Of a stretch of 64,000 bases of DNA, positions 16,511-41,400 are shown in pieces. The notes beneath the pieces are model-generated. The model did no database searches and had not been told where the DNA came from. It was given only the letters and a program-made list of their open reading frames with translations. The first letter of the stretch is position 1; every line of letters starts with the position of its first letter. This stretch comes from Lepidodermella squamata (taxonomy: Eukaryota; Animalia; Gastrotricha). The stretch covers positions 1,860,001-1,924,000 of the forward strand of contig JBLDXI010000032.1 of NCBI GenBank assembly GCA_047495785.1, read 5' to 3'. The translations under genes were made by a program, and so were the position numbers.

Positions 16511-19500
16511 ATGGGAAGCTCCTGTTCCTCGGCAAATTCCTCGAGCGCATCTGATGTTCCGTACATCCGTCAAATAAATAATCTTGAAGAAATAAGTTTC
16601 ACTGATATCGATGCTGCCTGGAATTTAGCAAAGCGTGAAAGTTCGAAATCGAAAGGTACAGCAAAATCAACAATAGTCATGCGAACAGGCTGGAAAACTA
16701 TACGTATATTTGTGTCATCAACCTTCCGAGATTTCGACGCCGAGAGAGAAGTGTTGGTGAAGAAAGTGTTTCCTGATCTACGGGAATGGTGCCAATCGAG
16801 GAGATTGAATCTTGTCGAATGTGATCTTCGCTGGGTAATTTGAATTTTCCCTTTATTTTCACTAGTCTGAAGGACTCGTTAAGGGAGTGCCGAAAGATTC
16901 AACGACTGAGACAACGCTGAGGACCTGCCTGGGTGAAATCGACAGATGCTACAGAGAGAATATAATGCCATTTTTCATTAACATGACCAGCGAACGCATC
17001 GGCTGGATTCCGCTTAGTAATAACTTCTTTGTTTAGGTATTTACTGTCTTAATTTTCAATATATTTATAAAACTAGGCCACGAAGTCCCTGGAGCTTTGC
17101 GACAGGAATATCACTGGCTGGACGGTATGAGTGTGACGGAAATGGAAATTATGCATGGGGCATTTCGCATAGACAATCCGAATGGTTTGCCTGATTTGGG
17201 TTGAATTATGCTTCAATGAAAACTATATGTTCATACTCAGCTCTTTTCATGATTCGGGATCCTTCGTTCTTGGAAAGTGTTCCTGAGGAACAGCAGCACC
17301 ACTTCATCGACGAATGTCCATTGGCTCCATACAAATTACAGAAGTTGAAGAAATGCATTGCTGAGAAGTTCCAAGGAAACTCTCGACTTTGCTACTACAA
17401 CTGTCATTATTCAGCGCTGGACAAGGACACGAAAATGCCTCGCTTTAAAGGTCTCGAGGAAAATTTTGCTCCTGTGGTAAGCCTCTTGATGAAAAAGCCT
17501 CAGTCGACAAATATTTTCCTTTGCAGGTTTTAAATTTCTTTAAAGAAAGAATAAGCGTACAATACCCTTTGGTGGACGAGAGAAAACAGGATCCTTATGA
17601 AGACGCTAAAATTCAACATGATGCCTTCATGAAAATGGCATCCGAGCGAGTTGTGGGTCGCGAGGCTCTTATTAACGAGGTAATTTTTACGTTTTCATTC
17701 AGAAATCTTTGATATCGAATTGATTCGGTCTTAGTTTGTCGACACCTATGTAATGAAGAAGAGCGACGTCACACCAGTAGTAATTTACGGTGGGCCTGGC
17801 TTAGGTAAAACGTCGTTGATGGCTGCGTTTGCCGATCGATGCGCAACTCTTGCCGTCATGCAAAAGCTCCCTAAGTATTGTTTGAATGACTTATATGATT
17901 TCAAATATTTAATGTTGCAAATATTAGACCGGTTACCGCTAAGCGCTGGCGGGTGTTTTATCATTTTGTCGGCTCTGTAGCTGGATCTACTGACCAGCTT
18001 TCTATGTTAGTCCGGCTTCTCATTGAAATCAAAGCGCTGAAGAAGAACGACAAACGTCCCACAGCTCTTGACGAAGCTATGGGGTTGGTACGGGGTGCTC
18101 TTTCCAATCCTCGAACAAAGAACTGCATCATTATCATTGACGCTATGAATCAGTTCGACGACAACAGAGGCATGCCTGCTCCGATTACATGGTTGCCTAG
18201 TAAAATGTCCCAACAAGTGCGGTTATTTTTCTCATTGACTCCGGAGAGCTCTCAGTTCAAGGGCGTTCAAGAAGCTGGCGGGGAGGTCTGGACCTTTATC
18301 AAGTTACAACCACTCGATCGCGAAACCAAAGAAAAAATGGTTACTTCAAACTTGACTCGTTATAACAAAGTTTTAGACAGAGGTCAACTCGAGCTATTGC
18401 TCAACAAAAATAGCTCTGATAATCCAATGTGGTTGTCACTCGCCACGGAAGAGCTTCGAGTTTTTGGCCGCTTTCGAGAGCTGACCAACAAAATAATAGC
18501 ATTACCCGATGGGTTGCCCGAGTTAGAAGCCGACATTCTCGGCAGATTTGAACGAGAAGGTGACGGCCGACGGATGATTGCGACCTTGTGTTTACTCGAA
18601 TGTTCAGTCCATGGATTGCTCGAAAGCGAACTCTTAGAGCTGCTGGCCAATCCGGACATTCTACCGGCTGCGTTGATGGACAAAATCGTCGTTACCGGCA
18701 CGATGGATGAACTTTCAGACGACATTGGTAGCTCTGGGCCGACAATCAGATCTAAACTTGAACACAAGCGATTGACGGCTAGCGAGTGGGCAGATATCTA
18801 TCGTGTTCTGCGGCCGTTTATGAGACCATTTGGCGCATCTGGCGAAGGAAGACTGGACTTCTACCATCGATCGCTTAGTAAAGCTGTGCGAAATCGGTAC
18901 TTCTTCAAGTCTACAAAACTTCCTGATGGTACGGTCAAAACAGAACGTTTAGAAGACATCACGAAATGGTTTCACAGGGTGAGTAAATTAAAGCATTGGA
19001 TCTAAAATTTGGAAATGTTGTTTGAAAACAGCGCTTGGCGGATTATTTTTCCGATAATTGCAAACATTTGGAGCGGCAGGTTGAAGAATTTCCTCATCAT
19101 GCGTGGAAATGCGGTGATCGAAAGAGCTTGGAAAAATTCCTGTGTCGATGGGACGTCTTCAACACAATGTACGATCCTGAGTATTCACGCGAGATTGCTC
19201 AATCTTGGGAACATGTTCACTTCATGAAAGTCGACTCTAACTTCAGTCGCGAGAAAACCATGACCGATCTGAAAAAATCAGGCGATGTTTACCTCAGAAT
19301 GGAGCAGTGCTATAACCGCATGATGCAAACGGAGATTGATGAATTCGAAAAGGCCGATGAAACCCGCCGTAAGGAAATTCTCAACCGGATGGAATGTATG
19401 TCTCGCGTTTTAGCCTGCAGCGGTCGATTCGAAGCTGCTTATTCGCTGTGCGAAAAGCTAATCGCATTTGCGTTTCCTAATATCGAAAAACCCAACCCTG

Positions 19501-20525
19501 GAGTAAACAGCGAGACACCGATTAAAGAGCGCGATTATTCGAAAGCAGGCGCTGATCTTCCTGAAGATGAGAGGCTTAAGCTGGCTCGTCTTCTTCACCT
19601 TCAAGCTAGAGTGTACGACGAGGAAATGCGTCAAGTTGATTACATGTACGCCAGCCATATACCGAAATGCGTTCTGATTATCGACACCCTGGAATGTGTG
19701 ATAGGCATTTTGCGCGAATTAGCGCCAAAAGATATGATGTTAGGGCAAAGTTTGAACCGGTGTAGTTTTTTCTACTCCGGCGTCCAACAGCGTGGCGGCT
19801 GTCCAGTATGCACTCGAGCTTATTGCGTCGAAATGTCTATTCAAAGGATAAACGATGCGATCGATTTTTATCAAAAGATGGATGGCCAGGAAATCGCATT
19901 AGGTTTATATTATACTGCTCCTCTCTTATTTACGATAAATATCTTCGAATGATTTCAGCTGATTGTTACATTACCCGTGGAGTGGTTTCGGAGGGCCAAG
20001 AGCAACTTGACTACTATCTGAAAGGCATGAATATGATTCTGGAGAATGCTGGGCAGTTTCATCCCTTGCTTGATCGAACATACCTCAACGTAATTTTTCA
20101 CTTGTACTCGTCAGCTATTTTCAAATCTGTTCAATTACAGATTGGAATTTATTACGAAGAGGCTCGTAATGGACAGGAAGCGTATAACTATTTTAGGAAA
20201 TGGTACGAATTTATGTTGGAAATTTATGGTCGCAACCACCCGCGGACTTATCGTGCCGTCCGAACTTTGAACGAATACCGTTAGTTTCGATTTGGGAAAA
20301 TATTCTCTTGTAAAAAATAGTTTTCTGACGCTAGAGTACGTGAGAATCGCGAGAGACCGCGGGGACGAAGTTCCTCAGCTTGGCGCTCAAGATGTGGATA
20401 ACGAGAATGAGAAAGATGAAAAGGAGAAAGAGGACCCTCAGCCTCAACCTGAAGACGGAGAAGAAGAAGAAGAAGACGACGAAGAGATACCAGGTTCAGA
20501 TGAGGAAGTCGAGGAACACGCATAG
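16511..20525 (+). CDS. STAND-1: DUF4062-NACHT-TPR protein (TEP1/NPHP3/TTC41-like), predicted N-myristoylated, acidic C-terminal tail
   Basis: Starts MGSSCSS. DUF4062 motifs WKTIRIFVSSTFRDFDAEREVLVKKVFPDL..CDLRWGV and SVTEMEIMHGA. Walker A GGPGLGKT (about 17789), Walker B IIIIDAMNQF, NPMWLSLATEELR, LDFYHRSLSKAVR, TPR-like helices. Exons joined by roughly 50-bp GT-AG introns. Confidence 0.88.
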
Positions 20526-20769: not shown

Positions 20770-23700
20770 ATGAAGAAAGGGCCTCAAAAAGCTGCCCCGG
20801 TGGCCCAGCCTAAACCCGGTGGCCCGGCTAAAAAGACACAACCTGAAAAACCTGGCTCTAAGGCTACAGCTCCTGGGAAAGTAACTCCAGCCCAAGAGCA
20901 ACTGTCGAGCGAGCCAAGTGAAACAGAGGTAATTTCCGAAATATTATAACTCCTATTTCATGATTGACGTTTTGTAGGTAAAAACGCCGGTTTCCCCTAA
21001 ACCTGAGGCTCAGTTATCTTCTCCCGAGACATTTTTGGTATGAAAGCAACATAACTCATTTGGGCTGTGGCATAATCATCAATTTTCTAGAATTACATCA
21101 AATCGCTTGAAAACGATAAGCTGAAAGAGTTGAACTTTCCTCAATCGACGCAAGTCACTGATTGGATGCTGTTTTGGCCAAGGCTTTCTCCTGCCTTATT
21201 CTCATTCATTGAATCTGTTGATATATCTTTGTGTCCAAACGTTACGGACTATGGCGTTTTATTACTAAGCTATTACCTTCCGGCATTAAAAAAAGTAATG
21301 GATTTTAACCTCAAAAAATTCAATTTATAATTTATTATAACTTTGAAGATTAATTTGACTGGCTGCAAGCAGGTCACTGAAAACAGCATGCGTTTTCTTT
21401 TCGAAAAGTGCCAAGTTCTGGAATCTGCTAAGCTTGACTGGACCTCAGTGAGATACATCCCAGCCAATTTACCGAAAGCTAAATTTTCAATCGCAAATTG
21501 CCCGCTCATTGTTGACGAATCGTCGCTACCAAAGCAAATCAAGTATCCAAACGCATTGCCTAAAAGTTTCACATTTGCCAAGATTCTAGTCGTTAAGCCT
21601 CCATCGCTAGCTTCACATTTCGTTGGGCTGAGTATTTTTCCGATGGAAGGCAAACCTGACGCAACTCAAACGATAAATTGTTATCAAAGCGGGATTTTTA
21701 GGGTGATTGAGTGCGTCGATGGGCCTGTTGTCCAGTCGTTGATCAGCGACTTCTCTCTCGTTCTAATCCCGTGTTGTTTTGACGAGGAGGCATATCTCGC
21801 AACGTTGAAATCTCGATGCGCGTGGATATTCAGTCTTGCTAAACATGTTCGAATAGCCATTTATCCGTTTTCCTTGCAGTCAGCGAGCCCGCTCGAAGCT
21901 TTTGGAGCTCTGGAAAAATGGCTTGAAAGTAGTACAAAATTATTGAATGAGAGAATCAACAGCTCCATTATTAACCTAGCTAACAAAGAATCGCCTCAAT
22001 CAAATGATATTTTGAACAAACAAGAGGCGATGCTGGCCTTCAACTTTTCCAGAAACGTATTCATTATGGGCGATGCAGCTTATGTTAGGCAATGGGCGGT
22101 TGACAACAAGCCACATAAAGATATTCCCAAGTCGATTTGGTTGGCCTGCCAATCCTTCGATAAAGCAAAAGCTGTCCTGAAAAAGGCGGCAAAGACGTTC
22201 TTTAGTGTTGATCATTTGAGAAAATTGATTAGCGGAGATTTCTCTGGTTATTGCTGGAATTCCTTAGTTTCGTTCCTGGTAGAAACTGGAAATTGCTGGG
22301 TTGAAACTTCCTATGGTAACGATGGGCTGAATGTCGGACCTAAGCACGCATTTGCTTTAATCGAATCTTTCGTGGCGTTTTTGAACAGCTTAATAACTAT
22401 GGAGAAGCCTCGAACCGCCGCAGGTGAAGATATTACCTGCTTAGACACCGATACTCCGTTGTTGTCTTTTGATGCTGCGTTCAAGTTGTTCATGAATGAA
22501 GAATGCTTTAAAGAGGAGGAATGCCTCAGATTAATGCGATATTTCGAATTCATGGGGCTTGCAATAGTTAGATCCGAATATGTTCTGATACTATCAGATC
22601 TGCGTCCACAGCCACCGATCCCGATAACTCATTTCCATTATGAGAACGAAGACACCATTGAGATCAAAACGAACTATCAGCTAACCTGCCTGCCGAGTAA
22701 CGTTCTCCCTGGATTAGTTGCCCTGATGGTCAAAGTTTTCCCGCCTACGATATTATGGCGTACTGGAGCTTACTTCTGCGAAGCCTCGATTTTAGGCATT
22801 TTATTGACTGCTGACGATGAAGCTCAGGTTATAACACTTAATCTAAGCTATGACAATACCGCTGACTTGGTTCAGTTGCCTTCATACGCCAATAATATCC
22901 AGCAATTCAAGGCTGCCCTTGATTACTCGCTATGTTTGGCAACTACCGCTTGTTGTGTTTACCTTCAGCCGTTTTCGATCGTTGACCTGACTAACGATGC
23001 CAACTTTATTTCTCCTGATTCTATTACCCACCCTGTGAAGTCTATGCCGGAAACTCGGCTCTTCTCCAGGCAGTTTGACCATACTCTTGCGAGATGTACT
23101 CGCTGCTCCATTGATATTTCGGCAATTGCTTCAATAGGTCGCTATCATGTCAGAAACGTTGGCATTAATGACGAGCCAGTTCTTGAACCCGTTAAAGGTT
23201 CAGAGATCGCGACGACGAAATTTAGCCTTGGCAACTACGAGATCGCCGATGGCGAATCTTTGCCGATATTCAACGATTTTGCGCCCAGCTTTTTCGAAAT
23301 TTCGAATACGGATCTTCTGGAGAATTTGATACTTTACCCGGGCAGCTCGTTCACCGGATCGGGATTAGCTATGGCATTTGCCGAGGGTAACAAGCTGATT
23401 GAATGCGTCTACGTATATGGAATCGACGGCGACAAGCCTGCAAAAAAGCCAAGCAAGCCGAGCACGCCATCGAAAATTAGCAGTAAATCTCCGATAGCCA
23501 TTAAATCGAGTTTGCGAGTTGATGTTTGCCTGGGAAAGCAGAAACCTGACCCTGAGCTTTCATTGACAGTCAGTACAGACGGGGCCATTGTATTCGAGAT
23601 CCAAGTTCCATTGAATCATCAGCTAAGTTTGAGGGCTACTTTCCGCAAACTTTCTGTCGAAAAATTGAAATTTGTGTCCTTTAACCGCAACTTGGGTGTA

Positions 23701-26700
23701 TTCAGGCGAGGATTCTTCCCAAGCTCAGGGGGTTCTGCACAGAGAGCCCAAATTGGCATGCGTCTCGAAGCTGTGGACTTAGTTTACCCCCATTTAATCG
23801 CAGTTGCTCGTATCGACGAGATAGCCCTAGATGGAAGATGGCTGATCAAATTCGATGGTTGGGGATCCAGGTTTGATTACTGGGCAGAGCCGACAGCTGA
23901 ACATTTGTTTCCATGCGGTTTTATGGAGTATGCCGGGAAATATCCTGATGTTATGAAAAAGTTGTGTGAAGTGAGAAAGCAGAACATTACAACTCAACTG
24001 CAGCGTCCTAAAAGCACAGATTATTCGCAAAGCCCCTTCCCTTGGCTGCAGTATTTCAGCGTCGTTAAAGAAGAGCGAGATGGAGAGCCAATAATTGCTC
24101 AAGCGGTGCCTTTGCACCTGTTCGGAAAATCGCATTTGTTGGGATTTGACAAGGATCCGAACTGTAATCAATACATGAACGTGGGAGGACATAGTCCGAC
24201 TTTGACCAGCTTGTTGTGCGACCAGGTTGCGAAATCTTTGTCAGCTGATGAAGAAGCTATCAACTATCGCGTGTTCCAGCATCTTGCGCTCCCTGCTGAT
24301 ATCGACTGGTCGCTGCTAGCTTGGCCTTCACGAGCGCAGTTGCTCGACTCGAAGAAAACATACCCACACTTTTTATGCGCCTGGCCGGACTTCGTGCATT
24401 TTGTCAACGAGCCTGGCAAGTTCGAAGATAACACCCCGGAATCGTCGGGCATGACTTTGGCTCTCGCAAATGTTCCTTCAATAAGTGGGCTCGCTAATAT
24501 TCTGAAGAAATGGCTCCTTGAGCAGCCTCGTTATATTCCAAACGATTTCAGCCTTCTCTTCAGTAATTTGGTCAAAGATTGCCCGTATTCTTACACGTTT
24601 TTGAACAAATCCGCCCTAAAAGCAGAGTCCGATGTCAGATATATCGAGGAGTGTATGAGGCAGCGCTTACTACCTTTTCTCCTGGAATATTTGCTGATAG
24701 TCGGGAATCTTGGCATCGAAAAGGTTTCTGAGATACTGCCAAAGCGGGCAGAGGTTGTCGGCGCTTATCAGCGTGTCACACTGGCTGCTCCGGGAACCAA
24801 CAACCAGTCAACATGGGCAAGTGTTACCGCCTCACCAAAATGCCGATTGCTTAACATGGGCGAGGCTGAGAAGCGAGCCTATTTCATGAAAGACTGTCCG
24901 CGACTTCTTTGCGTTCAACATGCTTTCCATTACACCAAATTTATGGAAACTACGACGCTTGATACACAATTGAACTGGAATTCGTCTCTTCCTGCGATCG
25001 GAAATTTTCATGATAATTTTCTAACCGTGTTCGCTCTCAGCCAGAGTGATGCGAGATCTCTCAGCGAGCCATTGAATATTAAGCACCCTTATCTAATGAG
25101 ATTCGCTGGATTTTTGTCGAATTTTATTGAACAAGCTGGTATCCCATCTTTAAGCTATTTGACTGAGCTTTACTTAGCTAGAAATGAGCTGACCAGTTTA
25201 CCTGAGGCCATCTCGAACTTGGCAAACTCTCTCCGAAAGCTTGATTTGTCAAGGAATCTCTTCATTGAAATACCAAATGCTGTATTTGGCTTGAAAGCAT
25301 TGCAAATTTTGAATGTTGACTACAACCCACTGGAGAGAGTAGATGACGGGATTTCTGCTTTGACAAATTTGAAAAAGCTGTCCCTAAAGAGCAATACAGT
25401 TAAAGCTTTCCCAGACGCTTTGTGGCAGTTGACCAATCTGCAGTATCTTGATATATCCGGAATGATACGAATAGCTACAAATAGCATTCACATAGATGAG
25501 GTTGTCACATTCATGCAAAAGGCGAACTTTTCATCGGCTGCCATCGAATATTTTCTCGATGGGGCACATGACGGACAGGGTCGAGGCGATGTTGAGTCAC
25601 TTAATGAGGATTTATTCAACTTCATCCAGCGGCTCGAACTGCCTCCTGGACAGCTTTTCCCTCAGGGGATTCTCCGCCTGAAAAATTTGATTTTCTTATG
25701 CTTGGCAAATCAATCGATTAAAGAGGTCCCTGCTGAAATCCAGTCACTGTCCCAATTGTCCCATTTGGACCTATCAGGCTGCTTGAACCTAGTTAATATA
25801 TCACCATTCATCGCCAAGTGCCCTTTCACCAGATTGAACCTTAACAACTGTCCCCAGCTAAAAACCCCTCCTGAAGAAATTCGTAAGAGTTATTTCGAGC
25901 GACTAATGCAGGGCTCGGTGCAATGCCGTCGAACTAAATTGATGTTCATCGGACTGGGCGGGGCTGGCAAAACCACTCTAGCCCACGCGTTGACCAAAGG
26001 CTCGAAAACTGTATCAAAATTTGAAGTAACTGATGGCATCGATATCACCAAGTGGGAAGTTTCAGATATCGAATTTCGAATGTGGGACTTTGCTGGGCAA
26101 GTAGTTTACTACAACACTCACCAGTTTTTCATTTCAAAAAGGGCTGTTTATTTGTTGGTTTGGAATATCAGGCTTGGCCATGAACATGCGGGTCTTGACT
26201 TCTGGCTTAGTTCTATTGCCTCTCACGCCCCAGGGGCCCCAATTCTTGTCGTGGGCACGCATTGCGATGAAGTTAGTCAAGAGCGCTCCTTCCTACCAGA
26301 GGCTAATTATCGGTCTAGATTCGATTCGATTTCCGGATTCCATTATGTCAGTAGCTTCACAGGTGCTGGCGTTGAAGAATTGAAGGCAGACATCATTAAG
26401 GTGACGCTTGCACAAAAGCACATGGGAGAGGAAATACCGGCTTGCTGGCTAGCTCTCGAGGAAGCCATTTCTGGGCTAGCGGACGAAGAGCTCTTACCGA
26501 TGAAAGCTATGGTTGAGAGTGCCCGCGCAGTAGGCATTTTTTCTATCGACGAGTTGGACCAGGCATTACAGTTTTTGACCGACATGGGATCCATTCAATA
26601 CTTCCGTACCGACTTCTTGCGCGATATTATTATTATAAACCCGCAGTGGGTTGTGGATGTGATGGCTAAAATTGTTTCTGTCAAAAACACGCGTTATATT

Positions 26701-29546
26701 GACCAGGGACGCATTAGGCGCGTTGATATTCCTCATATCTGGGCGGCATATGATCAGAACCTTCATGAGTGGCTTCTGAAGCTAACTGAGGCCTTTGATT
26801 TGACTTTTCCGTTGAAAAACGAGCCTGTCTCGATAGTTCCATGCCTACTACCGGAGAATCCGCCTGAAACCATGGTTTTCCCCAGCCTTGATGAAAACCC
26901 AGGACATCGGCAAACTAAGGTTGTTTTCATGTTCAGATATCTGCCCACTGGGCTTTTCAATAGAGTTCAAGTTCGCCTGTGCCAGTTTTCGGAAGGAGCG
27001 ACAATGTGGAGGCGCGGTAGTTTGCTCAAGAAAAACCAGCATCACGCCCTACTCTCACAGCCCGATTCCACGACTGTTCAAGTCAAAGTTCAAGGCCCCT
27101 GCCCTGAGAATATCGCATTCCTTATTCTTGAAGTCGTTGACACGTTAATAACCGAGTCATTTCAAGGGGTCCAACCCGATTACCTATTCGCATGTCCCGC
27201 GTGTGTTACGATTAGGTCACCAGATCCTAGCATGTTTGAACGATCGCGAATTAGACGCGCTAACGAATTGAAGGTGCCGTTTTTGCAGTGCTTGAACTAT
27301 TTCCATTCAGTTGGAACGCAAGAGCTCCGACAGCTATTCCCAGCTGAATCTTCGGCAGAGTTCGAAACTCAATTCTTCAGGACCATGCAAGACATTACTA
27401 GTCTGCAGCAAAACATTAAGATAGATATTCTAATAATTGGATGCTCGGCTGATGCTAAGCCCGAAGAGCTGGAAAACTGCGTGTCTACACCGGACGTTGG
27501 GAAAGATATCGAGGTGCTTTTTCCTAAATTGAAGGTCGTCACAGTGCCCGATCCGGACTCTTCATCTGATGCTGTTTCGTACGACCAGCTTAATGTCATG
27601 ATTCGCCAAGCTCGTGTTGTCGTCTATTGTCTATCAGCGCCTTTTATGGAGAACGACAGATGCTTAGGCGCCTTTCTTACCGGTCGAGAATCGCTAAAGA
27701 AGCCTAACTTGGTCATTATTTTGCGGGACTTCAATCTTCAGAATTACCCTACTCTCGCATTCCAAATGACCGATGACCTCTACTACAAAGCTATCAATCG
27801 TTCTAGGTACAGTCCAGATGAGTTGAAGAACCGAATTCTAATGCCGTTGGAACTGGTTGAGGCTCAGGAAAGGACCAAGGTTACTGTCTCGAAAAAGAAG
27901 CGACCAGATGTTTTCATTTCATATTGCTGGTCCAACAGTCGCGATGCCGTAAATAAGGGCTCAAAAGCTATTCAGAAGGCTTTGGGAGTAACAGATCCAC
28001 GAGATATTAAGAAGTACCTGGCTGATCATGGCTTCAGTTGTTGGCTTGACATCGAGCAAATCGGACTTGGAGGACTTTTTCGCGATATTGCCGATGGAAT
28101 TCGCTACGCCCAGGTTGTTGTGGTTTGCGTATCGGATGAATATATAAAATCGGAAAATTGCTTACGTGAATTTCACTTCGCCACCACCAGCCTCCGTCGA
28201 CCTATCGTTCTTTGTCCTGTCGGAACGGGAATCGACTGGCAAACGTCCGAAGTTAACCTGATTGTTTGTCAATCAGCTACTACAATAAATTTCCAAGTTG
28301 ATATAAAAGAGAACTGGGAGGCTCTTATTGAATCTGTAAAGAAGCATATCAAAATGAGGGATGACGAAGCAATTGCCCAAAGCGAAGATCCCAACCAGCA
28401 TGCGCTATCTAAACTCGGTCGACGCAAGACGTTATTGAACATAGCCAATGCTGAAGCTAACAGTTCAGCGACTGAGAAATCGTTGATTTTGCATGAGGTT
28501 ATCGAACTTGGTCAAAGGAAAATGCTAAGGCAACTTAGCGGCTACAGCCAAGCGGTCGATACGAGGCCCTATCCTAGGCTCATTTTGCTCGATGCAAAGA
28601 CACTTCCGGATCCTCCGAAAGAGAAGCGGAAAAATAAAGGCAAAAGCGATGATGACGAAGGAGCGAGTGAAAATGCTGATAAGTCCAAAGAAGCAGCGCC
28701 CGAAATTAGGTTAGATCTCCGTTTTAAGATTTTTTCTATACAATTGTTCCGTTTTAAAGGGATAACGATGAGGCGAACGTGCAAGTGGTAGATGAAGCCA
28801 CCGAACCTGCTGAAAAATCTCCTGAATCTGCGGAAGCTAAGGACGATGATAAGAAAGGCGACGAAGATGAGGAGGAACGAGAGGGAGAAATAATTGAAGA
28901 TGATCCATACGAGGGGTTAGACGTAACTGATCCCTTCAATCGACTGAAATGGCAAATTAAGTTTTTGTGTGAACACGAAAGTGGCTGGCATCCAAGTGAA
29001 CACAGCATAGTAGTTACTATACGTCAATTCCAGCAGTTTGGTCTTGGTAGCCCTGGTGAAGCTTTCAGATCCGCAGCTGGCTATTTCGGACCTATGCTCA
29101 CGTTTTTAAAGCAGTCCGGTAACACCACGCTAGAGCTTTTTACTCCGAAGCAACCTGAATTAATGAATACATGTGCTGAAATTGTCGCCCAGGTTGATCA
29201 GCTGATAACTCCTGGCCAAGAAGTGTTTCAGGATAACTACGTCTCCTTCAGGCAAATGGTTATGTCTCTAGATAAACAAAATCAATGCGGCGGTCTTAGG
29301 CGCTGCTTATTGGCGATGGGGAAAGAGCTGTGGCTATGTGATGAGCATCAAGGTTCTTCAAATTATCGCGCCAAAGCTGTGGCCGCAAGTGATAATAGCG
29401 CTGGAGCAACTGCTGAACCTTCAAAAGAAGCGGCTGCTGAGATTGATTCTGCTGATACTTTGGACAATGCAAAATTAGTACCTGTGAACAGACCTCATTT
29501 AGATGCTATCAAATCCTCATATAGTCGAGCTTGTGTTGTGCAATAG
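20770..29546 (+). CDS. ROCO-1: Cys-LRR / degenerate Roc-COR / MBT / LRR / Roc / COR / TIR-like / TIR / CaaX; no kinase domain
   Basis: ATG 20770 (MKKGPQK) with three short 5' exons. MBT GMRLEAVD..FDGW..FDYW at about 23755. LRRs LxxLxLxxN. Roc motifs GLGGAGKT (25951), WDFAGQ, VGTHCD. COR IINPQW..FRYLPTGLFNR. TIR DVFISYCW..NCLREF. Intron at about 28710-28759; ends SRACVVQ*. Confidence 0.88.
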
Positions 29547-29655: not shown

Positions 29656-32600
29656 ATGTCCGACGCGCCTAGTCGCAAGGCGAAAAATCAAGGTAGAGTT
29701 CATACATAGCCTTTTCCATTTTCAAAGTTTGAATTTCAGGCGACGGCTCCCCCGAAGTGAGCTTCAACTTGACAAGCCTTTTCTACAAGCTCTCAGACAG
29801 TTTCTCAACTCCGGCAAAATATCTGGTAAGTTTCATTAGTACCTTCCTACTATCTGCTTGACCGAAGAGTTTTCCAGAAACTTTTCGAGCAGTTTGCTGA
29901 CAAAAAGATCGAAGCTATCAACGCGAGGCAACTTGATCCCTTGACAGATGAGCTACTTTGCTTTCCTGCTATCACTACCCCGAAATTCGACTTTGTAACA
30001 ACCCTGGATATTTCTTTCACGTCTTGCGTAAGCGACACTGGAATCCGATGTATTGCTCAGTCCTTGAAAGCGCTGAGTAGCGTGAATGTGGCTGGGTGTC
30101 GCCTTCTGACGGAGAGCTCTTTGCGATGGCTTGATGTTTCAGGCGGCTCAAGGATGATGAAGTTGAATTTCGATTGGACCTCTGTTAGATACGTTCCATC
30201 ATGGACGGTTGATGCTTCACTTCGCAGTTTATCAATCGAAGGCTGTCCCCTAGTGTTGAAACCACAGAAGGTCTGGGACCCGAACTACACCCCAAAATCA
30301 ATCACCTTGGCCAAAATTGTGGTTTTGAAACCTAAAGAAATGGGCCTATCATCGATTTCGGGGCAGATCTTTCCTTGCGATGAACCTTCGTCTATCGCTG
30401 GCATTCCTTCCGTCGCTTACTGCTATAAAAGCGGTCCTTTTCGCGTTTTTGAATGTTGTGATGACGCTTGGGCTCAATTCATTCTTTCCGATAACTGCTT
30501 CGTAATCCTGCCCGTTGTTCTTGAAGAGAGAGCGTCTAGGGCTAATTTGGTAGAGTCGGTGGTTAGCCGGTTGAATTTAGTCGCATGTCTTGTTCGAAAT
30601 GTTAAATTTCTCGTTGTACCTGTTATCAAGGGGATGGCGAATACAAACTTTACACAGCTTCGCGGGGAGCTTACGGAATTGTTTAGTACGGAGACGTTTC
30701 CGACTGAAGCTAACTTCATTTCCGATGTTCGGCAATCAATTTTCAATAACTTGACGAAGACTGATGTGCAATTCACTGATTCCTATGCTGAGGTTCAAAA
30801 ATTTATCAACGCGGAATTGATTTCGCATAAAACATTACCCAACATCGCACAGCCGCTGTTTCAGGCTTTGGAAAATTCGAATTTCTTTTCGCGGCAGGAT
30901 AACGCAATGGGAACTCTGGGGGACTTCCTTGAATCATTGAGTGTTAACGATGTTGTACCAAATTGGTCATCTTTCTTAAGCCTCATGGTCGAGACTGGCA
31001 ACTGCTGGCTAGAAGCTCGAACAGCTATGTGTTCAGATTACCCTTCAGCTATCGGCCCTTCCCATTTGTACTGCCCTATAACGCAGTTTGTGCAATTAAT
31101 CTCAAGTATGGCTCAAACGGCGTCTGAGATAACTGCCAGCCCGGAAAAAAATAGCTGCTTACCCGAGGAAACTCCCTTGCTTACTGCTAGCAGTTTGCTT
31201 GGCGGTTTGGTGGATAGTTATGTGGCAAAACGGTTCATTGGGGTTTTGGAATTAAAGGGAATAGTTTTTGTGTTAAATGACTCTCCTATTTTACCTTTGT
31301 CCTTGAGGCCAGACCCTCCAGTAGATTTGAATCATTTTGTTGAGCGGAAACCAGGTGACACTGTAATTGAGTTATCTTATCCTTTATTGTGTAATTCTAG
31401 TCACACCTTTCCCGCTGTTCTCTCACTGCTGACGAAAATTTTATGCCCGACAACAGTGTGGAAAAGCGGTGCCTTTTTCTGCGAATCTTCTTTCCTCGAC
31501 GTTCTAGTCACCGCGAGTGATCGAAATTTGAATTTGAGGTTTAGCTTCGAAAGTTTTGCCTTGAAAAATGCCGCAGATGATGACCCGTTGAAGTCTTCGC
31601 TGTTAGGCTCTCTATCAATTTTGCACACTGCTTGTTGTGCAGTGCTTGCTCCGTTCGCAGCGGCTAATATTGAAAATGTGGGCACATCACACGGTATAGC
31701 TTGTATCCAGCAAACAGAGCATTGGATTGAATACAGCCGATCACTTCCTTTTTATAATCAAGGCGCTTCAAATAACTTGCGATGCCGTGACTGTTTTCTG
31801 GATTTGAAGAGTCTATGCGCGCTTCAAAAAGTGCAGCTAGTTTCGAGACCATGCAGCGACCTGATTGCAGTCGAAAGTTTGATGACTGATAAAAGCTCCG
31901 AAGATTTGCGATTTGAAGTTGCAATCTCTAACTATTATCTCGCAATTGACGAGACCGCCAAGCCTAACGACTTAGCTAGTGAACCGATTTTCGTGTATTT
32001 TGGCGATGTCAGTAACTTGAAGAAAGTGACGATTAGCCCTTCTTCTACTGAACTTTCCAGCCAATCGGAAACTGAAGCTCTTAACTTGGAATTTATTGCA
32101 GGGACGCTTATCTGCACCACGAAAGGTAAAGATGTTGGTAAAGATAGCCTTAAGCCCGTGAAGTGCGAAACCTGTCTTGTCGAGGCCTGTATCTCTTCCA
32201 ATAGGGAACTGAATGTCATTGTTTCCATAGGGGCTAAGAAGGCGTTTGAAGCTAAATTTAACAGCCCTTCACGATCAATCACATTTACAGTGGATCTCAA
32301 AGCGTCCTCTGAACCGCAATCCGCATCAAAGATGTCCCCTATTTATTTACATTGTCTAAATTCTAACGCAAGAAGTTTGTCGAAAGCTTCTTGTATTGTC
32401 GAGGGTATGGCCTTGGAGGCTGTCGATCGCAAGACACCTCATTTGGTTTGCGCCGCGCATGTCGCTAAGGTCAATACCGATGGCCGTTGGCTTATAAGAT
32501 TCGACGGTTGGTCAAACGACTTCGACTATTGGGCGAAGCCGAATTCGGCAGACCTTTTCCCTTGTGGGTTCATGGAATATCTCGCGCAGAACGAAACGGC

Positions 32601-35600
32601 TTTCGAAGAATGGAATGCTGCCAGAGGTGGGGAAATGAACCGGAATTTACAAGCGCCGCGTGACACGTCATACGGCGTTCCAATTTTTCCATGGGAAAAA
32701 TACTTTGCGGACAATAAAAAATCGAAAATCGGTGTCCCTGTACCATTTCATTTGTTCAATAAGTCACACCTTTGTGGCTACGACAACACGATGTTTTGGC
32801 GGCGCTTTCCCACTCTGACCAGCGACATTAAGACCTTGACGAACTACTGCGCGACCGCTATACCTCGCTTGTACGAAGATTCGATTGATGATTCAGGGCT
32901 TGCGGTTACGCCGGGTATGCGCCTTGAGGCTGTGGATATCAAAAACCCTGAATTGGTCAGTGTTGCCCATGTGAAAGCTGTTACTAGAGATGGCTTATGG
33001 TTGATATCTTTTGATGGCTGGGATTCAAGTTACGATTACTATATTGATCCTTCAGACCCTAAACGAATCGACCTATTTCCATGTGGCTTTATGGAATATG
33101 CGAATTCGAAACCTGGTGTTTTTGACGAGCTACTCGCCGCTTCAGGTCGCGACCTGAAGCGTGAGCTCCAGCCACCATTGGGAACAAACATTGGCAGCGA
33201 GTTTTCATGGGATACGTATCTTGGGCATATTATCAAGGGAAATGACAATGGGCCAGCTCGGCCAGTTCCTTTGAGTAAATTTTATCCATCCAAACTGTTC
33301 GGGTTTATTGTGCCCGAAAATCTTAGTTGTCACGATGCTGTTGAAGAAACGAATAATACTGAAAGTGGAACCAAGCGATTTGCTAGTTATTCATATAGCG
33401 AGATTTTCAAACAACCGCAGTTCATTCCGTTGCCAAAAATGACTAATGAATTGATGCAGTGGCCGTCTCGTATACGATTCACTAAAAAAGAGTTGACCCA
33501 TCCATATTTCATCTGTTGCTCCTGTGATCAACTTCATTTCGTGAACGAGTCTGCATTAAATCGTGGCTGTGTTTCGATCAATGCTGTTCCGCCTTTTGCA
33601 TTGGCTAATATTTTGATTACCCTACTTCAACAGTCCCGAATTGTACCTGATATCTTCGATCATGTTTTCGAGAGTGTTGATACCAAAGAAAAAGGGTCTC
33701 TCGCTGATTTTGAGAAGTCATTGAAACAAGTTGTCTTGCCTTTCTTATTGGACTATCTCACAATTCACTGCGCTTTCGTCGGGGAATCGAAATCTCGTAA
33801 AACTACCGAGAAATTGATCTATTCAATCTACGATCAAAATGAGATCAACAGTGCTAAGTCTGCAGGCGAGCTGTACCTTGCCGGTCTGAAATCAGGATGG
33901 TCAGCTGTTGAATTAGTTCAAGGCCAGGAGCATCTATTGCTTGACATGAGTATTGCCGAGCCTGAGATCTTCGGACGTGATACATTGTGTCCGAGGTTAA
34001 TTTGTGGCCAACATGCCTATCACTACGCCATGTTGAACAAAGATAGCTCAAAACCTCGTTTGACGCTCTCCGCCAAATCGCTCGGGCATTTGCACGATAT
34101 TTTTGTGACAAAATGCTCGTACAGCTCCGAGGATATCCAAAGCCTCGAGAAATCTTTGGACCAACATCACCCAGAAATAGCCCTTTTCTGCGGCACATGG
34201 TCTGAAAATTTGTTCTCAACGGGATTTTCGACTAAAAAAATTACCGAGCTGGTTTTAACTCACAATCAACTCACAGATTTGCCAAGCGGTGTTTCAGCAA
34301 TGGTTGAGACGCTGAAGTCACTCGACCTGTCATACAATCCTCTCGCTCGAATACCCAAAGTTGTTTTTCAAATGAAGTCACTTGAGAGCCTTAGGATAGA
34401 TCACGCTCCGGTAAAAGAAATCGACAATGAAATCGGTAATTTGACATCGTTACGCCGATTATCTCTGCGCTTCAATATGCTATCCGCTTTACCAGAAACT
34501 CTCAAAAGCTTAAATAGCTTGGAAAATCTTGATCTGACCGGAATGCCATTAATATTGAGTAATGACCCTGTTGATAAGGAAAGTATGATCGCCTTCGTGA
34601 AGGAAAATGACTATCCTATCGAAATTGAGCAAAAGTTGTCTAGTTTGTTTGTCAATGGCGTTAAGTCTGTTTCGAAGGATTCAGCGAATAGATTCCTGAT
34701 GAATGAAGTCCCGAGATTGAAAGCGTTCGATCTCCCTCGCTTGCCCTCAATTATTGAGTTGATCATGCCTAACCAAGGTTTCCCTTCGGTATCAGATATC
34801 CTAGGGAGGTGTACGAAGCTTCGAAAGGTTGATTTTTCAGGGTGTTTGAACCTCCAATCAATCGATTCGGCTATCGCATCTTGCCCGTTAGATTCCTTGA
34901 GCTTGGAGAATTGCCCCAACTTGACCACGCCACCTGCAGATATACGAGCAAAAGGCTTTGTAGCAACTCATGCTTATTTCAAAAGACTTGTCTCAGGATC
35001 TGTTGTATGCAAGAGATCCAAGTTGATGCTTGTCGGACTTGGGGGTGCCGGTAAGACAAGCCTACTACAAGCTTTGATGTCATCGGACGATGTAGCCATT
35101 AGTCGGGATGTAGATGTTACAGACGGTATCGACATCCAAACTTGGCGAGTCGCAACTGAGGACGACTCTTTGCTTGATCTGCGTTTGTGGGACTTCGCTG
35201 GACAGGTCGCTTACTACAACACCCATCAATTTTTCATGTCTCGCCGTGCTGTTTACGTTTTGCTATGGAACATTCGTTTAGGCCATGAGCATGCAGGGCT
35301 CGACTTCTGGCTCAGTTCTATCGCTAGCCATGCCCCTGATGCACCCGTCATTGTAGTCGGAACCCATTCGGATCTACTTCAAGGCTACCAACCTGTTTTG
35401 CCAGAGGCGAAGTACCGCCAACGTTTCCCATCCATTCGGGGTTTCTTCTACGTTAGCTCGTTGTCAGGATCGGGAATGGAGCCGCTTAGGAAGGAAATCA
35501 TTCAGGCAGCTCATTCACTAGAGGTAAATTTGAGATTTTTGCCCAGACTTCGCTAATTCTCATTTTTTGTTTATTTAGCATGTTGGTGAAGGTATGCAAC

Positions 35601-38461: not shown

Positions 38462-41400
38462 ATGCCTCCGAAAAAAGCAGCAGTTCCGGAGCCAAAGAAG
38501 AAAGTTCAGGCTAAAACGCTACCTGCTGGGAAAATTCAGCAGTTGGTGAGAAGTCCATCGCCCGTTGAACAGCAGCAACAGCAGCAAATATTTGTCGAAC
38601 AAGTCAGTAACAAAGGCGAGGAAGTTTTCGAAGAAGAAACCGAGGAGTTCCAAGAAGTTTCCCAGGAGCCATATGGCTTGCAACAGGAGTTGAAAGCTAA
38701 TTTGGAAAGAATTCCGTCTTGGGCGCGGAAGAATTCAAACAAAGGCATCGATGTCGTAGAACAGGTTTACATTCAAATAGTTAATGAAAATTGTCGCTTT
38801 ATTTTTGTCTACTTATTATAGAAGTTGGACCAGGCATTTCCCAGTAAGCGCCCTGTGAGGCAGGAGCTGAGTAACAACGCTCGTAAGGCTTTGAAAGGCT
38901 TTTTTCGCGAGATATTTAGTTTTTGTATTAAACAGCCCCAAGACCGATACAGCGAAAAGCTCCAGTTTTGACTACCGTGACAATCGATGTCGTTGATTTA
39001 GCCAAAAAAACGCCAGAAAGTTTCCGCTCGCCATCGGAATTTATAGTGAGTCACTTCAAATTGAGAAATTCGATAACATTAATAATTGATTTTTTTCAGA
39101 AACTGTTCGCAGTCGGGGCTAACGAAGTTCTCAATAGCGTTAAAATGCGCAAAAGCCGTGATGTTACGGATATTCTGTTTTACTGGCCTCGTTTCTCTGC
39201 GAAACAATTCAAAAATATTACGAATCTCGACATATCTTTCAGTTCGTTCGTCACTGATCTTGGTTTAAGGTGGATTTCCTTTTATTTACCCGCTCTTGAA
39301 GAGGTAAATTTCAGCAAGAAACATCTCATTTTAATATTAATATTGTTTTCAATGAAGTTAAATGCTACTGGGTGTCGATATGTTACCGAAAGTGGATTGA
39401 GATTTTTCCAGCGAGGCGAAATCAGCAAAACGCTCAACTTCGATATGACCTCTATTCGCTATCTACCCTCTCGAATTTCCTCCAATAAAGTGTCTGCTAA
39501 AGGGACCCCTATCATGGTGGACGAAGCTGCTGTTCTGAAAACTAAACGTAAAATCAAGCTTAAATGTTTTTCTGATTTTTCATTTCTTTAAAATTTACAG
39601 CGAATATCCCGCCTGAATTACCTGCGAAATTCACTGCTGCAAAAGTTGTGATTTTAAAGTCGAAGGACTTGCGAGATAGATCCATCGGACCGGAAATCGT
39701 GAAACCAGATGATCCCAGCGCTTTGATCGGATCCCCATCTTACATTTGCTCATATCGTAGCGGGCCATTTCGTGTCGTTGAATGCTGCGATTATACCGTT
39801 TCCAAGCTGGTTCTATCTGATAATTGCCTCGTAATTCTGCCATTTTTAACCGGAAGTTCGAGTGACTTTGTAAAATCAACATTAGCTTCAATTGAATCGC
39901 GTTTCAACTACGTGGTCACCGTGGTGAAAAATGCCAGCTTCATCGCAGTTCCAATCAACCTAGACCCGTCCGTAGATACAGATTTTGACCAAGTTCCGGC
40001 TTTGAATTCGGAAGTTGATGCGATGATTAAGGCGGCTGAGAAAGGTTCAGATGGAAAGGGAGAAGAGTTTAATAACTTCCCATCGGATCCTCGCTTAGCC
40101 ACCCTGCGTTTTCTTATGGATCACGATTTGCGAATTGAAGCGTCAAAAAAGGGCGTTCTACCCTGGTTAAGCAACCACATTCCCCACGCTGATATGCCTA
40201 AATCGGTTAATCTTTTGTTCCAAGCTGTTGAAAAATCGGAAATTCTTTCGCAAAAGGATAAGCCATTTTTATCGATCGGAAATTACGTTCAGGCAATGAA
40301 AAAATCTGTGATAACGCCCGAACTATCGCCGAAGTGGCCAGCTTTTTCAACAATTTTAGCCGAGACCGGAAATTGTTGGTTGGAACCTATTTCTTCAAAT
40401 TGTAGCGACGTGGCTAGTTCTATCGGACCGAAACAAATTTTAGCATCTTTTTCGAATTTCGTCAGATTTTTGAATGATTTTCTCGCTGTTTCCGACTCAA
40501 CGGCAGTCGCTGAGGATATTCAATGCCTTGCGCTAGACACGCCGCTTTGTAATGTTGAAAAAGTGAAAACTCTCATCAAACCAGCCGCGGGTAGTCATTT
40601 ATCTGACGAAGATATTTCTCGTTTTATGAACCACCTTGAGTTGAATGGAATCGCAATTTTCCGCCGCAAGTCCGCCCTTGTTCTCGGAAATCTTCGCCCC
40701 GAACCCCCCATTGGTCTCGACCAGTTCACTGAACCAGGTCAGCCGGCTCTGGCTGAAGCGTTAACGACAAATCACTTGAAAGTCTCGAAAAAATCCAAAG
40801 TGGCTGAGCCGAATACTGACCCAGCGCCCAAACATACGACACATTCCCATGTTATAAGGCTAGATTATCCGCTACTATGCAAACCTAGTGCGGTTTTTCC
40901 GCAACTGCTGGCGGTTTTGGTGAAAATTGTCCCGCCGAATTTACTCTGGAAAAACGGAGCATTTTTCTGTGAGACGTCGTTTTTAGACACCCTGGTTAAT
41001 TTCGACGATTCATCTCGCGTTGTCAAAGTCCGCTTTTCAGCTGAAAATTTCGTTTTCGATAGATCGATCGAAAAATCTCGCGGCATGCAACGGCTTGAGA
41101 CGGCAGTTTTGCATTCCTGCTCAGTAATCCACACTTTGTGTTGCCTTGTCTTATCGCCTTATGTTAAGGAGGATCTCACAAAAATCGGCCGATCGAACGG
41201 TATTAAATATTTGCCTTTCGAGAAAATTCGCCATGACGTTCATTTGAAACATTCGAGGGCGATTGAGACTTTCTCACGCCAGTTCGATCAAACCATCGCA
41301 AGGTGTTCAACCTGCCTGTTTGACGTGAAAGCCCTAGCCAATATTCGCAATTTATGCATGAACAGGCCATTTTATAAGGCCGGTGTAATCATCCGTGGCA

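What the first reader, a model, noticed from the sequence alone, without database searches (positions are those of the whole stretch)
21481..22960. Hidden degenerate second Roc-COR unit in the N-terminal half of each ROCO protein
Seen by manual self-alignment in ROCO-1, colinear segments match the active unit: FSIANCPL with LNLNNCPQL; AKILVVK with TKLMFIG (P-loop lost); FRVIECVD with FRMWDFAG; QSLISDFSLVLI with QFFISKRAVYLL; DIPKSIWL with EIPACWL; FLVETG with FLTDMG; LRPQPP with LPENPP; LPSNVLPGL..LWRTGAYF with LPTGLFNR..MWRRGSLL. The same unit is kept in ROCO-2 (about 30230-31650) and ROCO-3 (about 39620-41160). Established: Roc-COR proteins dimerise through COR. Inference: an internal LRR-Roc-COR duplication gives an intramolecular pseudo-GTPase/GTPase pair.
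Basis: partly seen in the sequence, partly recalled or inferred. Interest (0 to 1): 0.78.

Follow-up and report, generated by a model that had tools for sequence, protein, structure and literature searches.

The report
Dead second Roc-COR switch module
Each of three neighbouring giant invertebrate ROCO-TIR (probably immune) proteins starts with an ancient copy of its own GTPase switch module that keeps the fold but has lost every GTP-binding motif, a feature that domain databases miss and that is shared by relatives from placozoans to amphioxus.

Summary
ROCO-1 residues ~70-553 (window 21550-23001), and the matching parts of ROCO-2 (30283-31836) and ROCO-3 (39618-41354), are a divergent Roc/COR-A/COR-B unit.

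Pairwise comparison shows nothing above chance (BLASTP E=2.5; Smith-Waterman z=0.05), and Pfam finds nothing. Deeper tests agree with each other:
- **Profile comparison:** a profile built only from the N-terminal segments of 83 family members aligns colinearly with the family's genuine Roc-COR (hhalign 98.2%, E=3.9e-14, 405 columns).
- **Sub-domains:** each matches only its own counterpart. Reversed and cross controls fail.
- **Structure:** an AlphaFold model (pLDDT 80.8) hits only Roc-COR structures first (LRRK1, LRRK2, C. tepidum Roco; Z about 16).
- **Motifs:** G1, G3 and G5 are lost and G4 only partly kept in the N-unit, while G1, G3 and G4 are near-invariant in the active unit.

The Trichoplax homologue still has an intact P-loop in its N-unit, so this is an old duplication followed by decay.

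The proposed physical pairing of the dead unit with the live one was not testable here. The scan reported the same feature earlier on paralogues about 19 kb beyond this window (s1-368345). I found no paper describing it.

The parts
21348..21549 (+). ROCO-1: end of the short N-terminal leucine-rich repeat region, including the last repeat cap (FSIANCPL, aa 48-55). The exon starts after a tiny GT-AG intron at about 21296-21347.
   Evidence: The cap motif matches the cap before the genuine Roc in a profile-profile test (89%, E 2.4e-6; reversed control 0.31). Pfam LRR hits are below threshold only. The intron was read.
21571..22116 (+). ROCO-1 pseudo-Roc (aa 77-258): G-domain fold. G1, G3 and G5 are lost and G4 is not kept.
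   Evidence: hhalign Roc against Roc E 8.5e-7. The A4 profile hits LRRK2 Roc chains at E 5.1e-5. VIA gives Arl1/Arf6 Z about 12 on model residues 1-190. Motif table.
22117..22584 (+). ROCO-1 pseudo-COR-A (aa 259-414), containing FLVETGNCW and the second winged helix.
   Evidence: hhalign COR-A against COR-A E 6.9e-6, cross controls 0.1 or worse. Alignment.
22585..23001 (+). ROCO-1 pseudo-COR-B (aa 415-553), containing LRPQPP and LWRTGAYF. Model pLDDT drops after aa ~554. A conserved RCxxC follows at aa 584-588.
   Evidence: hhalign COR-B against COR-B E 1.6e-9. VIA gives COR domain 3dpt Z 11.7 on model residues 198-548. W and G are near-invariant in 39 sequences.
30283..31836 (+). ROCO-2 pseudo-Roc-COR unit (aa 115-632 of ORF 29941-35556).
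   Evidence: jackhmmer E 1e-107. Alignments A1 and A2.
39618..41354 (+). ROCO-3 pseudo-Roc-COR unit. The frame is open from 39576; the listed ORF starts at 39648.
   Evidence: jackhmmer E 5e-116. Alignments A1 and A2. Upstream frame read.
23758..23931 (+). ROCO-1 MBT repeat (aa 806-863), between the dead and live units.
   Evidence: Pfam PF02820 E 2.3e-12.
25141..27327 (+). ROCO-1 genuine LRR (aa 1267-1513), Roc (1532-1654), COR-A (1699-1836) and COR-B (1857-1995).
   Evidence: Pfam hits from E 1e-25 to 7e-18. G1, G3 and G4 are near-invariant in 120 homologues.
28003..28221 (+). ROCO-1 C-terminal TIR domain (aa 2221-2293).
   Evidence: Pfam TIR_2 E 5.2e-13.

Best explanation
Shown: residues ~70-553 of ROCO-1, and the equivalent parts of ROCO-2 and ROCO-3, are a homologue of the protein's own Roc-COR-A-COR-B module, together with the last LRR cap before it. 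It arose by an ancient internal duplication, older than the placozoan-bilaterian split. It keeps the fold but has lost G1, G3 and G5 and keeps G4 only in part. It is therefore a pseudoGTPase module that sequence suggests cannot bind or hydrolyse GTP.

Inferred: it has been kept for several hundred million years as a non-catalytic partner of the live switch. Because COR-B is the dimerisation element of Roco proteins, the most likely role is a COR-type docking surface. That surface would pair with the active Roc-COR, in the same chain or in a second chain, and so set the monomer/dimer state that controls the GTPase cycle and, downstream, clustering of the C-terminal TIR domains. I put about 0.95 on the identity and about 0.3-0.4 on the specific in-cis pairing.
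For: - **Profile against sequence:** the N-unit profile was built by jackhmmer only from segments upstream of the genuine Roc. It converges on 83 proteins and then hits the genuine Roc-COR of all 122 family members tested, best E 1e-16. The best reversed control is 0.38. ROCO-1's own genuine unit is hit at E 5.8e-9 in COR and 0.005 in Roc beta4-beta5.
- **Profile against profile:** hhalign gives 98.2%, E 3.9e-14, over 405 colinear columns.
- **Sub-domains:** cognate pairs score 8.5e-7, 6.9e-6 and 1.6e-9. All cross and reversed controls are 0.07 or worse.
- **Against solved chains by sequence:** the 39-sequence profile hits LRRK2 Roc (E 5.1e-5) and M. barkeri Roco2.
- **Predicted structure:** AF2 model pLDDT 80.8, pTM 0.83. 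The Foldseek top 37 hits are all Roc-COR proteins, with LRRK1 at E 7e-14. VIA gives C. tepidum Roco Z 16.5 (334 aa, 4.0 A), LRRK1 Z 16.1 and LRRK2 Z 16.0.
- **Language-model features:** all ten nearest clusters are Roc/COR families, best 0.92.
- **Motif loss:** shown.
- **Intermediates:** Trichoplax keeps Walker A (GNRGVGKS) and VGTH.
- **Sub-threshold Pfam hits:** COR-A and COR-B hits fall inside the N-units of Ptychodera and amphioxus proteins.
- **Retention:** the unit is found in 93 of 124 N-terminal segments across phyla.
- **COR-B as dimer element:** PMC6337361.
Against: - No direct evidence of any contact between the two units.
- About 900 residues, including an MBT repeat and LRRs, separate them.
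- The N-unit is the fastest-evolving part of the paralogues (29-36% identity, against 65-74% for Roc). That fits a sensor or relaxed constraint as well as a fixed docking partner.
- Pairwise sequence similarity is nil and Pfam finds nothing in the window proteins.
- Loss of nucleotide binding is read from sequence only.
- No RNA data were available to show expression.
Confidence: 0.6

Rival explanations
1. Trans rather than cis. With two COR-B surfaces per chain, the dead unit of one molecule binds the live or dead unit of another. This would give open-ended chains or higher oligomers that cluster the TIR domains.
For: COR-B is an intermolecular dimer element in known Roco proteins (PMC6337361). 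COR-B is the best conserved part of the N-unit (E 1.6e-9; near-invariant W and G). From general knowledge, TIR signalling usually needs oligomerisation.
Against: No oligomer data. Cannot be told apart from the cis model with these tools.
Confidence: 0.25
2. A sensor or decoy. The dead Roc-COR is a fast-evolving recognition surface, for a ligand or for a pathogen factor that targets host GTPases, and it does not pair with the live unit.
For: It is the most divergent region between the three tandem paralogues (29-36% identity). The genes lie in a cluster with NACHT/NWD1-like ORFs. Some relatives carry a ~600-residue SPRY-containing insertion inside the pseudo-Roc.
Against: No ligand or interaction data. 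Divergence may only reflect relaxed constraint after loss of catalysis. dN/dS was not computed because the paralogues are too diverged.
Confidence: 0.2
3. A functionless relic of a duplication that is decaying.
For: All catalytic motifs are gone and identity between paralogues is low.
Against: Open frames of about 1.6 kb are kept in all three paralogues. The unit is found in 93 of 124 N-terminal segments from Placozoa, Rotifera, Nematoda, Mollusca, Annelida, Nemertea, Brachiopoda, Hemichordata and Cephalochordata. It yields a confident fold.
Confidence: 0.04
4. Chance resemblance: the region has another fold and is not homologous to Roc-COR.
For: Pairwise and three-sequence profile tests are not significant. 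There is no Pfam hit.
Against: all contradict it, with clean reversed and cross controls.
Confidence: 0.01

Closest known systems
Roc-COR tandem of ROCO proteins (LRRK1, LRRK2, C. tepidum Roco, M. barkeri Roco2)
   Same: Same order of domains (last LRR, G domain, COR-A, COR-B). Same predicted fold (Z about 16, 330-410 residues aligned). Shared COR-B motifs (LLPxxPP, WxxG).
   Different: G1, G3 and G5 are lost and G4 is only partly kept. Below Pfam thresholds. It is a second copy in a chain that also has a live copy. Known ROCO proteins are described with a single Roc-COR that pairs between chains.
PseudoGTPase domains, e.g. the two in p190RhoGAP next to its GTP-binding domain (PMC9840978, PMC6523970; details from general knowledge)
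   Same: G-domain fold without nucleotide-binding motifs, lying in the same chain as a related nucleotide-binding domain, with a presumed regulatory or scaffold role.
   Different: Here the whole Roc-COR supradomain is duplicated, not only the G domain. The family and context (TIR, MBT, LRR) are unrelated.
Pseudokinase-kinase tandems such as JAK JH2-JH1 (general knowledge)
   Same: An internal duplication in which the dead copy is kept and regulates the live one in cis.
   Different: A different fold, and no evidence here of cis regulation.
MBT-LRR-Roc-COR-TIR proteins described in Aplysia (LOC101848126; PMC9334734)
   Same: Same family. P0041 is that protein and carries the N-unit (E 4e-59).
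   Different: The passages of that paper I read list MBT, ROC, COR, LRR and TIR and do not mention an N-terminal unit.

Membership tests
ROCO Roc-COR module (for the N-terminal unit) | Ras-like G-domain fold (Roc) | tested here: met
   AF2 model residues 1-190 against Arl1/Arf6, Z about 12, 141-149 aa, 3.4-3.5 A. The profile hits LRRK2 Roc chains at E 5.1e-5. hhalign Roc against Roc E 8.5e-7.
ROCO Roc-COR module (for the N-terminal unit) | COR-A and COR-B directly C-terminal of the G domain | tested here: met
   hhalign COR-A E 6.9e-6 and COR-B E 1.6e-9, with controls 0.1 or worse. COR structure 3dpt Z 11.7. Full tandem matches to 8r4d, 8e04 and 8tzh at Z about 16.
ROCO Roc-COR module (for the N-terminal unit) | Functional G1-G5 nucleotide-binding motifs | tested here: not met
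   The G1 GxxxxGKT motif is absent in the window proteins and in all bilaterian N-units. In G3 the Asp is replaced by Glu (56 of 63) and AGQ is lost. G4 is partly kept and G5 is lost. Only Trichoplax keeps Walker A.
ROCO Roc-COR module (for the N-terminal unit) | Reaches the Pfam gathering scores of Roc, COR-A and COR-B | tested here: not met
   No hit even at E<=10 for the three window proteins. Sub-threshold COR-A/COR-B hits appear in the N-units of P0012 and P0021.
ROCO Roc-COR module (for the N-terminal unit) | COR-B-mediated dimerisation | not testable with these tools
   Needs complex prediction or experiment.
ROCO Roc-COR module (for the N-terminal unit) | Preceded by leucine-rich repeats | tested here: inconclusive
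   The last repeat cap is shared with the genuine unit (89%, E 2.4e-6, 17 columns). Pfam LRR hits upstream are all below threshold, and the upstream repeats look like the cysteine-containing type rather than the type before the live Roc (sequence reading).
PseudoGTPase | G-domain fold combined with loss of nucleotide-binding or catalytic residues | tested here: met
   by sequence and model only.
PseudoGTPase | Experimentally shown absence of nucleotide binding or hydrolysis | not testable with these tools
   Needs a binding assay on the isolated unit.

The most novel reading that the evidence does not exclude
ROCO-TIR proteins of most animal phyla carry a built-in dead Roc-COR that forms an intramolecular pseudo-dimer with the live Roc-COR. 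The homodimer-based GTPase cycle of Roco proteins would then be replaced by a single-chain pseudoGTPase/GTPase switch that gates TIR signalling, a GTPase counterpart of the JAK pseudokinase-kinase arrangement.
Probability: 0.3. Interest if true: 0.8.

Novelty: new variant of a known kind. Interest (0 to 1): 0.66.

Why it matters
How Roco GTPases, including the Parkinson's-disease protein LRRK2, use COR-mediated pairing to run their GTPase cycle is still debated. A natural family in which one chain holds both a live and a dead Roc-COR gives a ready-made asymmetric pair for testing what a partner Roc-COR contributes apart from catalysis.

It also assigns about 500 previously unannotated residues in over 90 large invertebrate ROCO-TIR proteins. 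It adds the Roc-COR supradomain to the short list of pseudoGTPases. And it offers a decay series: Trichoplax with an intact P-loop, deuterostomes with remnants, and lophotrochozoans and this genome with none.

Tried and rejected
**Searches that found nothing or too little**
- BLASTP of N-terminus against Roc-COR and Smith-Waterman with shuffles: not significant.
- hhalign with only the three paralogues: E 0.087, and it matched the wrong winged helix.
- Pfam on the N-terminal 800 residues at E<=10: nothing relevant.
- Three-sequence profile against PDB sequences: nothing.
- Word-index protein search on residues 40-620: blank.
- Exhaustive HMMER search with the three-paralogue profile: one cluster only, P0001. 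The wider family had to be reached through the conserved C-terminal half and a local iterative search.
- First AF2 run with a three-sequence alignment: pLDDT 36.6, unusable.

**Alternative alignment rejected**
- HMMER placed the genuine P-loop on the N-unit's beta5 strand in some proteins. I rejected this in favour of the full colinear hhalign alignment and the structural match.
- G....GK[ST] matches elsewhere in N-terminal segments are at chance frequency, except in Trichoplax, where the motif sits at the aligned P-loop position.

**Other negatives**
- TIR remnant after the N-unit in the window genes: none found.
- RNA evidence: no RNA run holds the locus.

Full report
**Context**

The window is eukaryotic, with sparse ORFs and tiny GT-AG introns. 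It holds three tandem genes on the + strand with the same architecture. Each has a short basic N-terminus, a few leucine-rich repeats, about 550 residues without annotation, an MBT repeat, LRRs, Roc, COR-A, COR-B and TIR (Pfam).

ROCO-1 is one uninterrupted ORF of 2,482 codons (21343-28791). ROCO-3 is broken between Roc and COR-A by two tiny introns around a micro-exon, so it is not a pseudogene. The breaks in ROCO-2 were not examined. NACHT/NWD1-like and TPR ORFs flank the cluster.

As raw pairwise similarity they are not above chance:
- Smith-Waterman z=0.05 against 300 shuffles.
- A three-paralogue profile against the genuine units gives E=0.087.
- Pfam finds nothing at E<=10.

**Getting depth**

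The region evolves fast. A word-index search was blank. An exhaustive HMMER search of 1.84 billion representatives found a single cluster, P0001.

I therefore collected the family through its conserved C-terminal half. This gave 178 proteins at E<=1e-20, from molluscs, annelids, nemerteans, brachiopods, rotifers, a nematode, hemichordates, amphioxus and Trichoplax. I cut every protein just before its genuine Roc and ran jackhmmer with ROCO-1 aa 70-605 on those N-terminal segments only. It converged on 83 proteins. With the final profile, 93 of 124 segments carry the unit at E<1e-5. The ones without it are short, probably truncated, models.

**Homology to Roc-COR**

The N-unit profile never saw a genuine Roc-COR, yet:
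- It hits the genuine Roc-COR of all 122 proteins tested, best E 1e-16. Reversed sequences give 0.38 at best.
- Profile against profile, hhalign gives 98.2% probability, E 3.9e-14, with 405 colinear columns (N-unit 8-481 against genuine 19-448).
- Split into parts, each sub-domain finds only its counterpart: Roc 8.5e-7, COR-A 6.9e-6, COR-B 1.6e-9. Every cross or reversed comparison is 0.07 or worse.
- The last LRR cap before each unit also matches (E 2.4e-6 against 0.31 for the control). The duplicated block therefore included at least the end of the LRR.
- The 39-sequence alignment A4, searched as a plain HMM against PDB sequences, hits isolated LRRK2 Roc domains (E 5.1e-5) and M. barkeri Roco2 (7.9e-4).
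- Pfam itself gives sub-threshold COR-A/COR-B hits inside the N-units of Ptychodera and amphioxus proteins.
- The language-model search of residues 40-620 returned only Roc/COR clusters among its ten nearest.

**Structure**

With A4 as input, AlphaFold2 gives pLDDT 80.8 and pTM 0.83 for ROCO-1 aa 70-620. The three-sequence run had failed.

Foldseek's first 37 PDB matches are all Roc-COR proteins: LRRK1 7e-14, C. tepidum Roco 3.6e-12, the RocCOR tandem 3dpu 8.9e-11, LRRK2 and MbRoco2. Small GTPases follow.

VIA-align gives:

| Match | Z | Aligned | Notes |
|---|---|---|---|
| C. tepidum Roco (8r4d) | 16.5 | 334 aa, 4.0 A | |
| LRRK1 (8e04) | 16.1 | 395 aa | |
| LRRK2 (8tzh) | 16.0 | 369 aa | model 1-531 on LRRK2 1329-1917 |
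| Arl1/Arf6 | about 12 | | model 1-190 |
| Isolated COR domain (3dpt) | 11.7 | | model 198-548 |

**A dead GTPase**

In 120 genuine units, GLGGAGKT, WDFAGQ and G[TS][HQ]xD are essentially invariant. At the aligned N-unit columns:
- G1 is gone, with no glycines, variable residues and deletions.
- The G3 aspartate is replaced by a conserved glutamate (56 of 63) and AGQ is lost.
- G4 keeps only a partial G and D.
- G5 is lost.

The decay is graded across phyla. The Trichoplax N-unit keeps an intact Walker A (GNRGVGKS) at the aligned position, plus VGTH. The Ptychodera unit keeps a near-P-loop and amphioxus a VGD remnant. This supports descent from a working Roc before the placozoan-bilaterian split.

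**Function**

The unit is retained widely and folds confidently. Among the three paralogues, however, it is the most divergent region: 29-36% identity, against 38-47% for LRR, 65-74% for Roc and 49-72% for COR. COR-B, the dimerisation element of Roco proteins (PMC6337361), is its best conserved part.

I therefore favour a non-catalytic docking or regulatory module that pairs with the live Roc-COR. No RNA run holds the locus.

**Novelty**

Full-text searches for pseudoGTPase with ROCO, for second, tandem or duplicated Roc-COR, and for pseudo-, degenerate or cryptic Roc found nothing relevant. The Aplysia immunome paper describes family members with MBT, ROC, COR and TIR, and the passages I read do not mention this unit (PMC9334734).

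Within this scan the same feature was reported earlier on paralogues about 19 kb beyond this window, and a follow-up agreed (s1-368345). My tests were made independently on this window's genes.

**Verdict**

The identity of the unit as a dead Roc-COR duplicate is very likely (about 0.95). The intramolecular pairing remains open (about 0.3-0.4).

Noticed in passing
P0047 (Trichoplax adhaerens) aa 190-330: The N-terminal unit of the placozoan homologue keeps an intact Walker A (GNRGVGKS) at the aligned P-loop position and a VGTHAEE G4-like motif, while G3 is lost. It looks like an intermediate in the decay and may still bind nucleotide.
   Followed up: partly
P0012 (Ptychodera flava) about aa 390-410; P0017/P0020/P0021 (amphioxus) about aa 300-330: Deuterostome N-units keep P-loop remnants (GLCGGKKS in Ptychodera; VGD/VGDH in amphioxus). 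Lophotrochozoan units and the window proteins keep none.
   Followed up: partly
P0021 (Branchiostoma) aa 778-877: A TIR_2 domain (E 2.3e-7) follows the pseudo-COR-B directly, so the duplicated block may originally have been LRR-Roc-COR-TIR. No TIR remnant was found at the matching place in the window genes.
   Followed up: partly
P0028, P0048, P0029, P0039, P0045, P0053, P0087 and others (SPRY-bearing molluscan members): The pseudo-Roc is split after profile position ~97 (between helix 3 and strand 5) by an insertion of about 450-680 residues; Pfam finds SPRY domains in it in P0028, the one scanned.
   Followed up: no
P0055 (Owenia fusiformis) aa 21-189: This family member starts with a genuine Ras-family domain (Pfam Ras E 4e-39) far upstream of its Roc-COR-TIR. 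It may be a different N-terminal solution or a fused gene model.
   Followed up: no
window 44736-44850: ROCO-3 is interrupted between Roc and COR-A by two tiny GT-AG introns of about 45-60 nt around a micro-exon of about 14 nt that encodes HMGE, matching ROCO-1's continuous KHMGEEIP. The apparent ORF break is splicing, not decay.
   Followed up: partly
window 17953-20284 and 49668-50618: ORFs with weak NWD1-like winged-helix, nephrocystin-3 TPR and NACHT/AAA_16 matches flank the ROCO cluster, suggesting a neighbourhood of immune-type STAND genes.
   Followed up: no
window about 27244-27340 (ROCO-1 aa ~1968-2000) and 23092-23106 (aa 584-588): The genuine COR-B ends in a conserved CPAC...C....H pattern that may bind metal. 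The N-unit is followed by RCxxC, with one Cys invariant in 39 homologues. Whether the two are equivalent was not resolved.
   Followed up: no
window 21709-21711 (ROCO-1 E123) and the aligned column in 63 homologues: The G3 aspartate of the Roc domain is replaced in the dead unit by a glutamate conserved in 56 of 63 sequences. A new conserved role for this position is possible.
   Followed up: no
P0093 and P0095 (Lingula and a metagenome protein), N-terminal 1,300 residues: Two or three overlapping partial matches to the N-unit profile within one protein suggest further partial repeats of the dead unit in brachiopod members.
   Followed up: no
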